Assembly: GCA_001179505.1 (NCBI GenBank)
Contig: CDMY01000571.1
Location: 62,001-126,000 of the forward strand
Direction of reading: 5' to 3'
Source: Vitrella brassicaformis CCMP3155
Lineage: Eukaryota > Protista > Chromerida
DNA: 64,000 nucleotides
Shown here in pieces: positions 61,686-64,000 of the stretch. Position 1 is the first letter of the stretch, and each line of letters opens with the position of its first letter. The position numbers were made by a program, and so were the translations under genes. Under the pieces are notes generated by a model that saw only the letters and a program-made list of their open reading frames with translations, had not been told where the DNA came from and ran no database searches.

Positions 61686-61720
<35 letters not shown>

Positions 61721-62076
61721 TGTGTAGCTGCTGCCTCATGGATGGATGGATGGATGTGCACGTGTGCGTGGTAGTCGGTGGTCTGATGCTTGTAAAGAGG
61801 GAGACTCGCGTGGTGTGTAGATCGAGCCAGCCACGGTCGTGAAAGCAATCTTGATGCGTGAGGACATTCATTGGTCGAGTCACGTCAACACATGTTTGTA
61901 TGCACCATTCACAAAGGGCGTGTCAGCGGTTCCCGCTGCACCCTCTCTCTCTAACACAGCACACACATGAGGCAAAAGTCGCCTCAAATCACAATCACAC
62001 ACACGTCGCATCCATCACACAGCCAGCCATAGAAGCCGCTATCAGCAGCTGGTGCAACCAGCAGCCCTTCGTCTGC

Positions 62077-62900
62077 TCATGCCTCATCAGGCGGGGCCTC
62101 CTCAACGCCCTCGCCGAGTTTGAAGATCTTGAAGTCCTTAACCTTGATGGGGCCGCCCACCTCGCCCTCGGCATCCTTGAGCACCTTGGACACCTTCCTC
62201 TTCGTGTCGTCCAACATCCACTCCTGCACCGACACACCACACACACACACACAGGCAGACAGAGGGGCATCATCGATTTGTGTGAGTGTGCCAGCTATGT
62301 GACTCGGCTCGGCTGACCTGTTCGGTGAGGACGACTTGTTCGTAGAATTTGCGCAGTCGCCCCTCGACCATTTTGTCGATGATCTCCTCGGGCTTGCCGC
62401 TCTCGCGCGCCTGCTCCTTGAGCACCGCCCGCTCCTTCTCCAACTTGGAGACATCCAAGCCGCCCACATCCTGACCACAACACACGACCCGCAAGTGCCC
62501 ATGCATCCTCTCCCTCTTCTGTGTGACTTTGCTTACCACTGACTCAGGCCTAGCCACCGAGATGTGCATGGCGACCGTCTGGCCGACCTCTCTCAGCTTG
62601 GCCTTGTCGCCGCCCGACTCGAGAGCCACCAACACGCCGATCTGGCCCATGTTGCCACTCAGCGGATTGTGCAGGTAAGTCGCAACCACCCCATCTGCGC
62701 CATCAAGGCTCACGCCGGCCGACCGACGCAAGTCGAGCTTCTCGCCAATGACGCCTGTAAGTGCGGGCACCTCCTGCTCAACGGTCTTGCCCTCTGTGCC
62801 CTCTGGGTATTCCGCCGCCTTGAGAGCGGCGAAGTCGCCCCCCTTGTCAAAGGCGATGTCGGCACAGGTGAGGGCGAACTTCTGGAACTGCTCGTTCCTC

Positions 62901-62931
<31 letters not shown>

Positions 62932-63328
62932 CGAGCACCCCCTTGGCGTCGTCGGCCTTGACCACCACCAGGCCCTCAGATGCCTTGCGCCCCGCCCGCT
63001 TAGCGGCCGCAGCCAGCCCCTTCTTCTTGAGAATGTCCAGGGCGGCTTCCATGTCGCCCTCTGTGTCTGTCAGCGCCTTCTTGCAGTCCATCATGCCCGC
63101 GCCGGTCTTCTCGCGAAGCTCCTTGACCAATGTCGCTGACACAGCTGCCATCTGCAGGGACGTTGCTGCTGATCTTGGTGCTCGCCTCAGCTGCCTCAGC
63201 TGCTGCAGAGGCCCTGCATGTGTTGTGAGCGGCTGGGTGGAGGGGGAAAGGGGCAGCGGGCGAAGCTGGAAGCATTGGGAGGGCGTAAAGGCCAGCAGAA
63301 TCGTCGGCAGCAAGAAGAGGCGCTTCAT
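62077..63328 (-). CDS. tsf: Organellar translation elongation factor Ts with bipartite (signal + transit) presequence
   Basis: [50 protein letters not shown]-terminal [24 protein letters not shown] followed by a Ser/Arg-rich transit region. Three introns. Confidence 0.95.
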
Positions 63329-63526
63329 CAACGATGCTGCCGGCAAGAGATGAAGACACTTCATTACGTAGACCACGGTCAGAGCAGATCTGAACGAGAT
63401 CTGGCACACCCTGAGGCAGACAAGTCAGCACCAGCCTCTGCCAGCCTCTCAGACCGTCGGGGACCGTTCGTGGTCAGTGCGCGCTGTTCATGCGATCCTC
63501 ATCTGCAAGCTTATCACGCATTCACC
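63329..63526. promoter_or_regulatory. Candidate 198-bp bidirectional promoter
   Basis: Short non-coding gap between two divergently oriented ATGs. Function is inferred from position only. Confidence 0.5.
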
Positions 63527-64000
63527 ATGAAGCGCCTCATGCTCTCGACGATTCTTCCCCTGTTGCTGTCCCTTACACCCTCCCAGTGCTTCCAGCTTCG
63601 CCCCTTGCCCCCCTCCCCCTCCCTCTCCCAGATCAGCCCATCGCACTCATCAGCCCTAAGGCGTCATGCGCCACCTACCGGCCCTCTCACCCTTGCGCAC
63701 GCCGCCGTCACAGCAGATCTGGCGGAGAAGGTGTCAGCGGAGCTCGGCCGGCCTGAGGGCATGTCTGAGGAGGAGTTCCATCGGATGCTGGAGAGCGAGT
63801 CGAATGACATCGAGTACGGCGTGGCTGTCATGGTGGGCGGCATGACGCGCGAGCAGTTCGCGACCTTCAAGGACCTCATCCTGACTTTCTGGGAGGATGA
63901 GTCGCTCAAGGGTGCAGCTGGTGGTGCGGGAGATGACATGGGCGAGTGGGTGCTGGTCCACGACCTGCCTGTCGCGCGGATCACCAAGCGGATGCTCGTC
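63527..64000 (+). CDS. 3'-truncated putative plastid-targeted protein (not in the ORF track because it runs off the edge)
   Basis: Open from ATG 63527 to the window end: [35 protein letters not shown]...GVAVMVGGMTREQFATFKDLI...LPVARITKRMLV. Mature part is faintly DUF3783-like (unverified). Confidence 0.75.
   Translation, partial: MKRLMLSTILPLLLSLTPSQCFQLRPLPPSPSLSQISPSHSSALRRHAPPTGPLTLAHAAVTADLAEKVSAELGRPEGMSEEEFHRMLESESNDIEYGVAVMVGGMTREQFATFKDLILTFWEDESLKGAAGGAGDDMGEWVLVHDLPVARITKRMLV

What the first reader, a model, noticed from the sequence alone, without database searches (positions are those of the whole stretch)
63235..63630. Two head-to-head genes share an inverted-duplicated plastid-targeting presequence
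Seen: EF-Ts (minus, ATG 63328) starts [32 protein letters not shown]. An unrelated + strand ORF (ATG 63527, missed by the ORF track) starts [35 protein letters not shown]. The DNA arms form an imperfect inverted repeat across 198 bp. In the [12 protein letters not shown] core the differences are synonymous (acg/aca, caa/cag, ccg/ccc, ctg/ttg). The mature proteins share nothing. Known: signal peptide + Phe at +1 + transit peptide targets complex red plastids. Inference: one gene gained plastid targeting by copying its neighbour's presequence through a local inverted duplication, and both copies are under selection.
Basis: partly seen in the sequence, partly recalled or inferred. Interest (0 to 1): 0.9.

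Follow-up and report, generated by a model that had tools for sequence, protein, structure and literature searches.

The report
Neighbouring genes share copied plastid leader
In the alga Vitrella brassicaformis, two unrelated back-to-back genes (a bacterial-looking translation factor EF-Ts and a DUF3783 protein) begin with the same ~30-residue leader. A ~96-base piece of one gene's start was copied in reverse onto its neighbour, a rare direct view of how a gene can pick up a likely plastid address label.

Summary
The organism is Vitrella brassicaformis CCMP3155. EF-Ts (minus strand) and a DUF3783-family gene (plus strand, ATG 63527) are head-to-head. They share a 90/96-nt inverted repeat, 63239-63328 and 63527-63622, with alignment score 89 against 19.8±2.9 for shuffles.

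- **What is shared:** the signal peptide, the SQC|F cleavage site and the first ~12 transit-peptide residues. The 198-nt spacer and the distal transit peptides are not homologous, so this is a short, sharp-edged patch.
- **Transcription:** both genes are transcribed. The EF-Ts mRNA 5' end is at 63476 and the partner contig starts at 63525.
- **Relatives:** two environmental Vitrella lineages (dS 0.18 and 0.39) keep the EF-Ts copy, and the closer one also keeps the partner copy and the head-to-head layout. Paralog-specific synonymous differences are fixed, so the copy slightly predates their split and is not being homogenised.
- **Copy number:** two whole-genome contig sets showed no clear third copy at ≥80% identity.
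- **Correction:** EF-Ts probably starts at the upstream in-frame ATG at 63364.
- **Direction:** probably partner to EF-Ts. Partner homologues carry bipartite leaders, and the EF-Ts is 57-60% identical to Rhodospirillales EF-Ts.

Plastid import is untested. Unchecked scan notes report similar pairs elsewhere in this genome.

The parts
63239..63328 (-). EF-Ts copy of the shared leader module ([19 protein letters not shown]|[11 protein letters not shown]). The predicted signal-peptide cleavage lies between Cys 63274-63272 and Phe 63271-63269.
   Evidence: Conserved in L005 and L006.
63527..63622 (+). Partner (DUF3783-family gene, P0002) copy of the shared leader module (MKRLMLSTILPLLLSLTPSQC|FQLRPLPPSPS). 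Cys is at 63587-63589 and Phe at 63590-63592.
   Evidence: Conserved in L005.
63329..63526 (.). 198-nt spacer between the two mirrored ATGs. Its halves show no mirror symmetry. It holds the EF-Ts 5'UTR and a stretch of at most 48 nt between the two transcript ends (63477-63524), likely a compact bidirectional promoter.
   Evidence: Spacer halves score 15 against 15.6±2.5 for shuffles. Transcript ends.
63329..63364 (-). Upstream in-frame ATG (63364) plus 12 codons ([12 protein letters not shown]). This is the probable true EF-Ts start and extends the signal-peptide n-region.
   Evidence: It is the first AUG in the mRNA, with no ATG in the 5'UTR. It is conserved in L005 and L006, whereas the 63328 ATG is ACG in L006.
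63365..63476 (-). EF-Ts 5'UTR. It contains a conserved element with two AGATCT palindromes at 63385-63404.
   Evidence: mRNA contigs L002-L004 and X4 record 17 end at about 63476. 86-88% identical in L005 and L006.
63152..63238 (-). EF-Ts-specific distal transit-peptide-like region ([29 protein letters not shown]). It is not homologous to the partner. It is followed directly by the retained bacterial-type start Met at 63151-63149.
61720..63476 (-). EF-Ts transcription unit. Exons are 63476-62536, 62469-62317 and 62222-61720. Introns are 62535-62470 and 62316-62223. The stop codon is at 62079-62077.
   Evidence: Mapping of mRNA contig L002 to the window. Pfam EF_TS, E 6e-47.
63623..63706 (+). 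Partner-specific distal transit-peptide-like region (residues 33-60). It is partly alignable with the N-terminus of the Chromera velia orthologue.
63525..64000 (+). Partner transcript and CDS as far as the window reaches. The gene continues beyond the window (367 aa, one 84-nt intron).
   Evidence: RNA-run contig (1366 nt) starts at 63525. Gene model from L001.

Best explanation
A short inverted copy of about 96 nt (possibly up to about 115 nt) placed the first ~30-33 codons of one gene onto its divergently transcribed neighbour about 200 bp away. Those codons are the start codon, the signal peptide, the SQC|F cleavage site with Phe at +1, and the proximal transit-peptide residues FQLRPLP(P/L)SPS. 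The most likely process is a replication template switch or a similar patch-copying event.

The event happened inside the Vitrella lineage, only shortly before the three sampled lineages split. Both copies have since been kept by purifying selection on the peptide, without gene conversion between them.

Each gene then continues with its own unrelated transit-peptide-like stretch. Both proteins therefore carry a bipartite leader of the kind used for import into red-derived complex plastids. They are expressed from a compact bidirectional promoter.

The likelier direction is from the DUF3783-family gene, whose relatives in other algae already carry such leaders, to the EF-Ts gene. The EF-Ts looks like a bacterial (alphaproteobacterial) acquisition that still keeps its bacterial start Met behind the leader.

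Shown: the homology, its sharp limits, its age relative to the lineage splits, transcription of both genes, and protein-level constraint. Inferred: the copying mechanism, the direction, and plastid import.
For: - **Homology and limits.** The arms align at score 89 against 19.8±2.9 for shuffles. The spacer halves (15 vs 15.6±2.5) and the distal transit-peptide parts (17 vs 16.3±2.4) show no similarity.
- **Uniqueness.** It is the only such inverted repeat in the 64-kb window and the only two SQCFQ peptides in six frames. Contigs of two whole-genome runs (116 and 143 Mb) laid at >=80% likeness gave no clear third copy. The same call did place 41-95-nt pieces of 84-93% identity elsewhere on the stretch.
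- **Comparative data.** L005 (EF-Ts dS 0.18) has both leaders head-to-head, and L006 (dS 0.39) has the EF-Ts leader. In a 57-nt block, 3 differences are fixed between paralogs, 5 are derived in the Vb/L005 EF-Ts lineage and 6 in the L006 EF-Ts lineage. The copy is therefore only slightly older than the split, and there has been no later conversion.
- **Selection.** dS 0.37, dN 0.084, Fisher p 0.017. The core is invariant apart from one Q>H change.
- **Transcription.** The EF-Ts contigs reach 63476. The partner contig starts at 63525 at equal depth, 35 vs 36.
- **Leader features.** MKR n-region, hydrophobic core with 9-residue Kyte-Doolittle maximum 2.3-2.7, S at -3 and C at -1, F at +1. The transit part has 4-5 K+R, 0-2 D+E and about 20% S+T. 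A Phe after the cleavage site is reported for chromerid plastid proteins (PMC6668581).
- **Direction.** Partner homologues P0126, P0127 and P0129 have signal peptide + A/S|F leaders, and the partner's distal region aligns with the Chromera orthologue. EF-Ts is 57-60% identical to Rhodospirillales EF-Ts. It scores 346 bits there, 171 against E. coli and 84 against bovine mitochondrial EF-Ts. It starts with the bacterial MAxxSAxLVKELRE right after the leader.
Against: - No localisation data exist, and no dedicated predictor (SignalP, ASAFind) could be run.
- The search for further copies only reaches >=80% nucleotide identity. The protein word search did not even recover the known partner, so it is uninformative.
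- One unlisted short piece in run X1 adds depth over about 63572-63639. It is probably an assembly bubble of the same locus, but this is not proven.
- The partner RNA contig has only 2 nt before the ATG, so its true start site is unknown.
- The direction is inferred. The Chromera orthologue model lacks a signal peptide and may be truncated.
- EF-Ts has its own upstream 12 codons and its own distal region, so it may already have had a leader.
- No junction microhomology was evident by eye. A formal test was not run.
Confidence: 0.7

Rival explanations
1. The same patch copy occurred, but it changed nothing about targeting. Both genes already had working bipartite leaders, and a short ectopic inverted conversion or template switch merely overwrote about 96 nt of one leader with the other's. 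This would be a neutral replacement.
For: - EF-Ts has an SP-like 12-codon extension upstream of the patch ([12 protein letters not shown]). It is conserved in three lineages and is the only start left in L006.
- EF-Ts has its own 29-residue transit-like region downstream of the patch.
- The patch has sharp edges on both sides.
Against: - Such a replacement would normally need prior homology.
- The upstream 12 codons alone are not a signal peptide with a cleavage site.
- The bacterial-like EF-Ts must have gained a leader at some point, and the patch supplies exactly the parts that matter: h-region, cleavage site and Phe.
Confidence: 0.17
2. The leader belongs to a multi-copy leader family that heads many unlinked plastid genes in Vitrella, for example as a mobile 5' exon or cassette. 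Its presence on two neighbours would then be incidental.
For: - Unchecked scan notes report other shared leaders in this genome (s1-233248, s1-197300).
- One unexplained extra short piece lies over 63572-63639 in run X1.
- The protein-level search was insensitive.
Against: - No clear third copy was laid at >=80% identity from two whole-genome contig sets.
- There are only two copies in the window.
- The orientation is mirrored and the copies are adjacent.
- The copy is only slightly older than the lineage split.
Confidence: 0.06
3. The inverted repeat is kept for a nucleotide-level role, such as a symmetric regulatory element of the bidirectional promoter or an mRNA localisation signal. The peptide identity would then be a by-product.
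For: The two genes share a very short promoter region and have equal RNA depth.
Against: - Differences between the copies are concentrated at synonymous sites, at a rate like genome-wide dS (0.37-0.64 vs 0.39). The constraint is therefore on the peptide and not on the DNA.
- The arms lie on two different transcripts.
Confidence: 0.03
4. The similarity is due to chance, convergence of signal peptides, or an assembly artefact.
For: Signal peptides share composition. The poly-C stretch is hard to assemble, and run X6 has a gap at 63586-63631.
Against: - The alignment lies about 24 standard deviations above shuffles.
- Identity extends to synonymous positions.
- Both arms are seen in the genome assembly, in separate RNA contigs and in independent metagenome contigs.
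Confidence: 0.01

Closest known systems
Presequence acquisition by duplication of an existing targeting signal in plants: rice rps11 (Kadowaki et al. 1996) and Populus rpl32 in a duplicated Cu-Zn SOD gene (Ueda et al. 2007), as summarised in PMC7488351
   Same: An organelle- or bacterial-type gene carries a targeting leader that is homologous at the nucleotide level to the leader of an unrelated gene already targeted to that organelle.
   Different: - Those cases involve simple mitochondrial or chloroplast presequences.
- They arose by insertion into a duplicated donor gene or by exon shuffling with an intron at the junction, and the genes are unlinked.
- Here the leader is bipartite (signal peptide + Phe + proximal transit peptide), there is no intron at the junction, and only about 96 nt were copied in inverted orientation onto the immediate head-to-head neighbour.
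Proposed exon-shuffling or recycling origin of bipartite leaders in algae with secondary plastids, as cited in PMC3017844 and for Euglena in PMC2920757
   Same: [quoted passage not shown]
   Different: That literature argues mostly from intron positions. Here the donor-recipient pair is still recognisable at 84-86% nucleotide identity, is physically adjacent, and can be dated against sister lineages.
Short template-switch (quasi-palindrome) mutations that create local inverted repeats (own knowledge, not tested here)
   Same: The copy is in inverted orientation, lies a few hundred bp away, is about 100 nt long, and has sharp edges without flanking homology.
   Different: Such events are usually described as mutation clusters or hairpin-perfecting changes. 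They are not described as the source of a functional N-terminal targeting module on a second gene. No junction microhomology was evident by eye.
Head-to-head paralogue pairs from whole-gene inverted duplication, for example GSIIB in Chlamydomonas (PMC2978018)
   Same: The genes are divergently oriented and have similar 5' ends.
   Different: In those pairs the whole genes are paralogous. Here only the first ~30-33 codons are shared, and the mature proteins (EF_TS vs DUF3783) are unrelated.

Membership tests
Bipartite targeting sequence of red-derived complex plastids | N-terminal signal peptide with a positive n-region, a hydrophobic h-region, and small residues at -3 and -1. | tested here: met
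   MKR n-region. The 9-residue Kyte-Doolittle maximum is 2.67 (EF-Ts) and 2.27 (partner). S is at -3 and C at -1. This is a heuristic check only, because SignalP was not available.
Bipartite targeting sequence of red-derived complex plastids | Phe (or another aromatic residue) at +1 of the signal-peptide cleavage site. | tested here: inconclusive
   F follows SQC in all five sequences, and a Phe at +1 is reported for chromerids (PMC6668581). The cleavage position itself is predicted and has not been measured.
Bipartite targeting sequence of red-derived complex plastids | Transit-peptide-like region that is net positive, acid-poor and rich in S/T. | tested here: met
   EF-Ts: 40 aa, 5 K+R, 0 D+E, 20% S+T. 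Partner: 47 aa, 4 K+R, 2 D+E (both at the mature end), 21% S+T.
Bipartite targeting sequence of red-derived complex plastids | The leader directs import into the plastid. | not testable with these tools
   This needs presequence-reporter fusions or proteomics.
Presequence acquired by duplication of an existing targeting signal | Nucleotide-level homology between the leaders of two genes whose mature parts are unrelated. | tested here: met
   Arms score 89 against 19.8±2.9. Mature parts are EF_TS versus a DUF3783 family.
Presequence acquired by duplication of an existing targeting signal | The donor gene was already targeted to the organelle before the event. | tested here: inconclusive
   Homologues of the partner in other algae carry SP + A/S|F leaders. 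The Chromera orthologue model starts without a signal peptide. The pre-event state in Vitrella is unknown.
Presequence acquired by duplication of an existing targeting signal | The recipient is a transferred (organellar or bacterial) gene that needed a leader. | tested here: inconclusive
   EF-Ts is 57-60% identical to Rhodospirillales EF-Ts and keeps the bacterial start Met. No phylogeny with eukaryotic EF-Ts was possible.
Short template-switch inverted duplication | Inverted copy close to its template, with sharp edges and no flanking homology. | tested here: met
   198 nt lie between the copies. The spacer and the distal regions are at shuffle level.
Short template-switch inverted duplication | Microhomology at the switch points. 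| not tested
   None was evident by eye at the ATG edge. The distal edge is blurred by divergence (CCCAG is shared after a 3-nt offset). No formal test was run.
Elongation factor Ts (PF00889) | Match to the EF_TS dimerisation/core domain and the N-terminal UBA-like domain. | tested here: met
   PF00889 at E 6e-47, 160 bits against a cut-off of 27. PF25025 is weak at 25.6 bits against 33.2. E. coli EF-Ts 1efu_B matches at E 3e-49.
DUF3783 (PF12646) | Match above the Pfam gathering score. | tested here: not met
   P0002 scores 19.8-20.4 bits against a cut-off of 27. Its homologues P0129 (42.1 bits) and P0126 (31.2 bits) pass, so family membership is likely by transitivity only.

The most novel reading that the evidence does not exclude
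Vitrella has a recurrent mutational process that makes inverted patch copies of about 100 nt across bidirectional promoters and so moves N-terminal leaders between head-to-head genes. In this instance it would have re-addressed a horizontally acquired alphaproteobacterial EF-Ts to the plastid. The EF-Ts was perhaps previously untargeted, or was mitochondrial via its Arg-rich distal region. The patch would have put a signal peptide and Phe in front of that region. This would be a one-step mechanism for recruiting foreign genes into a complex plastid.
Probability: 0.25. Interest if true: 0.85.

Novelty: new variant of a known kind. Interest (0 to 1): 0.62.

Why it matters
How transferred genes acquire the two-part leaders needed to cross the four membranes of red-derived plastids is a long-standing question. 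It has mostly been argued from intron positions and leader composition.

Here the two copies of the module are still adjacent and 84-86% identical. The event can be dated against sister lineages. The copied piece is exactly the part known to matter most: signal peptide, cleavage site, Phe and proximal transit residues.

This makes the question testable in one locus. The module can be swapped or deleted, both proteins localised, and the pre-event state sought in relatives. If similar mirrored starts elsewhere in this genome hold up, it would point to a general route for leader spread and for domestication of horizontally acquired genes.

Tried and rejected
- **Protein word search with the EF-Ts leader.** It returned only EF-Ts itself and missed the known partner. 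It is too insensitive to say anything about a leader family.
- **Two scans of JGI metagenome contigs.** The leader alignment gave 51 pattern matches and the partner alignment gave 600, with none confirmed. Neither Vitrella transcripts nor relatives seem to be in that collection.
- **Mirror symmetry of the 198-nt spacer.** It is at shuffle level, so the idea of a large palindrome with a diverged centre was rejected.
- **Homology of the distal transit peptides.** It is at shuffle level for both DNA and protein. Only the His at position 37/39 is invariant.
- **The 12 upstream EF-Ts codons as a 36-nt tandem copy of the first 12 leader codons.** Identity is 19/36 nt and 7/12 aa, with mono-shuffle p 0.0007. 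This was left open, leaning towards not a recent copy: the segment is over 90% conserved among lineages yet only 53% like the leader, and the ATG was chosen by eye.
- **Chromera genome context of the partner orthologue.** The protein is not on record.
- **Cluster look-up for the partner of the L006 lineage.** It was not found. Contig L006 stops about 35 nt short of the partner ATG.
- **Supplements of PMC6668581 searched for EF-Ts predictions.** Nothing was found.
- **Literature searches for an identical phenomenon.** None was found in the held library. This is not proof of absence.

Full report
**What is there.** The window comes from Vitrella brassicaformis CCMP3155, contig CDMY01000571.1. 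On the minus strand lies an EF-Ts gene with Pfam EF_TS at E 6e-47. Its annotated product is P0001 (363 aa) and it has two spliceosomal introns. The exons are 63476-62536, 62469-62317 and 62222-61720. On the plus strand, starting at ATG 63527, lies the annotated 367-aa gene P0002. It runs off the window end, which is why ORF lists miss it.

**The repeat is real and sharply bounded.**
- The repeat finder reports arms 63239-63297 and 63564-63622 (59 nt, 86%) and ATGAAGCGCCTC on both sides, with 198 nt between the ATGs.
- A gapped local alignment of the arms (90 nt against 96 nt, from the ATG to ...SPS) scores 89, against 19.8±2.9 for 500 dinucleotide shuffles.
- The halves of the 198-nt spacer show no mirror similarity: 15 against 15.6±2.5.
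- The distal transit-peptide parts are at shuffle level for both DNA and protein.
- The shared unit is therefore a patch of about 96 nt. It holds the start codon, the signal peptide, the SQC|F site and FQLRPLP(P/L)SPS. A few weaker matches may extend it to an invariant His at about 115 nt.
- It is the only non-microsatellite inverted repeat of at least 40 nt within 1.5 kb in the 64-kb window. SQCFQ occurs only twice in the six frames.

**Transcription.**
- Three transcript contigs carry the spliced EF-Ts mRNA with 101-151 nt before ATG 63328: L002 and L004 from JGI-held assemblies and L003 from Logan ERR558152. The longest genome-matching 5' end is at about 63476.
- In an RNA run (X4), the EF-Ts contig ends at 63476. 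A separate 1366-nt contig begins at 63525, two bases before the partner ATG. Depths are equal at 35 and 36, and nothing lies in between.
- Both genes are therefore expressed, and the partner ATG is on its mRNA. At most 48 nt separate the two assembled 5' ends, which points to a compact bidirectional promoter (inference).
- The exact partner start site is not fixed by an assembly end.

**A correction to the EF-Ts start.** The EF-Ts 5'UTR contains no ATG before 63364. That ATG is in frame with 63328 and adds [12 protein letters not shown]. In the environmental lineage L006 the 63328 codon is ACG (Thr), while the upstream ATG is kept. The upstream ATG is therefore probably the real start, which gives a signal peptide with a long n-region.

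**Relatives.**
- The EF-Ts search returned two ENA metagenome proteins, 99% and 95% identical over about 55% of the query. Their contigs were fetched as L005 and L006.
- EF-Ts exon 1 gives dS 0.18 (Vb-L005) and 0.39 (Vb-L006), with dN 0.007 and 0.022. These are separate lineages and not re-samplings of the strain.
- L005 carries both leaders in the same head-to-head layout. L006 carries the EF-Ts leader but stops about 35 nt before the partner ATG.
- In a 57-nt ungapped block around the cleavage site, 3 positions are fixed differences between the EF-Ts copies and the partner copies. These include the synonymous ACG/ACA and CAA/CAG. A further 5 are derived in the Vb/L005 EF-Ts lineage and 6 in the L006 EF-Ts lineage.
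- Two conclusions follow. First, the copies have not been homogenised since before the L006 split. Second, at that split they differed at about 3 of 57 positions at most, so the copying event is only slightly older than the split. That is far younger than the Vitrella-Chromera divergence, where the partner orthologues are 33-38% identical.
- Orthologous spacers are still 86-88% identical. Flanks copied at the same time should therefore still be recognisable. Their absence means the copied piece really was short.

**Selection.**
- Over 29 aligned codons the paralogs give dS 0.37 and dN 0.084, from 7 synonymous and 5 non-synonymous differences. Fisher p is 0.017.
- In the 12-codon core all four differences are synonymous. 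That core was picked after the fact.
- Synonymous divergence is like genome-wide dS, so the constraint acts on the peptide and not on the DNA.
- The EF-Ts leader still evolves much faster than mature EF-Ts, as targeting peptides usually do.

**Is it one of many?**
- Contigs of two whole-genome runs (116 and 143 Mb) were laid at >=80% likeness. They showed no clear third copy on either arm. The same call did place 41-95-nt pieces of 84-93% identity from bacterial EF-Ts genes of the non-axenic culture on 63035-63129, so short matches were detectable.
- One unlisted short piece adds depth over about 63572-63639 in run X1, with no listed mismatches. It covers partner-specific sequence and is most simply an assembly bubble, but this was not proven.
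- Copies below 80% identity cannot be excluded.
- The protein word search was uninformative, and two metagenome scans were empty.

**What the leader is.** Both leaders have an MKR n-region, a hydrophobic core, S at -3 and C at -1, and Phe at +1. They continue with an acid-poor, S/T/P/R-rich stretch. A conserved Phe just after the cleavage site is reported for plastid proteins of both chromerids, though it is less strict in Vitrella. Presequences are otherwise said not to be conserved in sequence (PMC6668581). Import was not tested and no predictor could be run.

**The two proteins and the likely direction.**
- *The partner.* HMMER against 1.84 billion representatives found a Chromera velia orthologue (Cvel_14502, E 2e-32) and short algal homologues. 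Two of these pass the Pfam DUF3783 threshold, while P0002 itself does not at about 20 bits against 27. Three homologues begin with a signal peptide followed by A|F or S|F...TVNA|FIRPP in Tribonema gayanum...GSYA|FAPSP, and ...FSTS|FLVRR. The family therefore seems plastid-directed in algae with red-derived plastids. The partner's distal region aligns with the N-terminus of the Chromera protein.
- *The EF-Ts.* It is 57-60% identical to Rhodospirillales EF-Ts, and no eukaryote appears among the best 120 hits. It scores 346 bits there, against 171 for E. coli and 84 for bovine mitochondrial EF-Ts. Its bacterial-type start ([15 protein letters not shown]...) follows the leader directly.
- *Inference.* The EF-Ts is a bacterial acquisition that needed a leader, and the partner was the donor. 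I put this direction at about 60%.
- *Precedent.* A nuclear-encoded EF-Ts serving a plastid-encoded EF-Tu is established in Plasmodium (Biswas et al. 2011, cited in PMC4042851).
- *Open question.* Whether the event created targeting or overwrote part of an older leader is open, because EF-Ts has its own upstream 12 codons and its own 29-residue distal region.

**Comparison with what is known.** Acquisition of presequences by duplicating an existing targeting signal is established in plants: rice rps11, and Populus rpl32 in a duplicated SOD gene (PMC7488351). Reuse by exon shuffling has been proposed for secondary plastids (PMC3017844). This case differs in four ways:
- The module is bipartite.
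- There is no intron at the junction.
- The copy is a short inverted patch.
- The two genes are immediate head-to-head neighbours sharing a promoter region.

Searches of the held literature found no such case. I file it as a new variant of a known kind.

**Leads from the scan.** Unchecked notes on other pieces of this genome describe similar things: mirror-image start codons on unrelated head-to-head genes (s1-226962), a 101-bp in-frame inverted repeat at two GH26 starts (s1-201966), a shared signal-peptide exon on head-to-head genes (s1-233248), and a 116-bp template-switch insertion (s1-248734). I could not read those loci. If they hold up, the process is recurrent in Vitrella.

Noticed in passing
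window 62077-63151 (EF-Ts mature part): The nuclear, intron-containing EF-Ts is 57-60% identical to Rhodospirillales EF-Ts and far less similar to E. coli or bovine mitochondrial EF-Ts. No eukaryote is among the best 120 hits. A fairly recent horizontal acquisition from an alphaproteobacterium seems likely.
   Followed up: partly
window 63385-63404: The element CAGATCTGAACGAGATCTGG, with two AGATCT palindromes, lies in the EF-Ts 5'UTR. It is nearly invariant in L005 and L006, while the surrounding spacer is 86-88% identical. It may be a promoter or UTR control site.
   Followed up: no
L005 (ENA ERZ893784), L006 (ENA ERZ893782); runs X9, X14-X17: ENA metagenome assemblies and marine sediment metagenome runs hold Vitrella-like lineages. 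Those on contigs L005 and L006 have synonymous divergence of 0.18 and 0.39 from CCMP3155, which suggests undescribed species-level diversity of vitrellids in the environment.
   Followed up: partly
window 63035-63129: In the Vitrella genome runs, high-depth contigs of 19-26 kb match only the conserved EF-Ts N-domain, at about 84-93% identity. They are probably bacteria of the non-axenic culture.
   Followed up: no
window 63527-64000 and beyond (P0002): The partner belongs to a small DUF3783-related family seen here only in Chromera, Tribonema and unnamed algal-like sequences, several with bipartite leaders. This is a candidate conserved plastid protein of unknown function.
   Followed up: partly
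window 62931-62966: A 2069-nt contig in the RNA run matches 36 nt of the EF-Ts core with 5 mismatches. It could be a second EF-Ts transcript of Vitrella or a bacterial one.
   Followed up: no
window 63176-63202 (minus strand): The EF-Ts distal transit-like region contains a 9-nt tandem repeat, CAGCTGAGG twice, which encodes QLRQLR. In L006 the same place carries a CAG/CAC run (HHQQQQHQ). This suggests slippage-driven turnover of that part of the leader.
   Followed up: no
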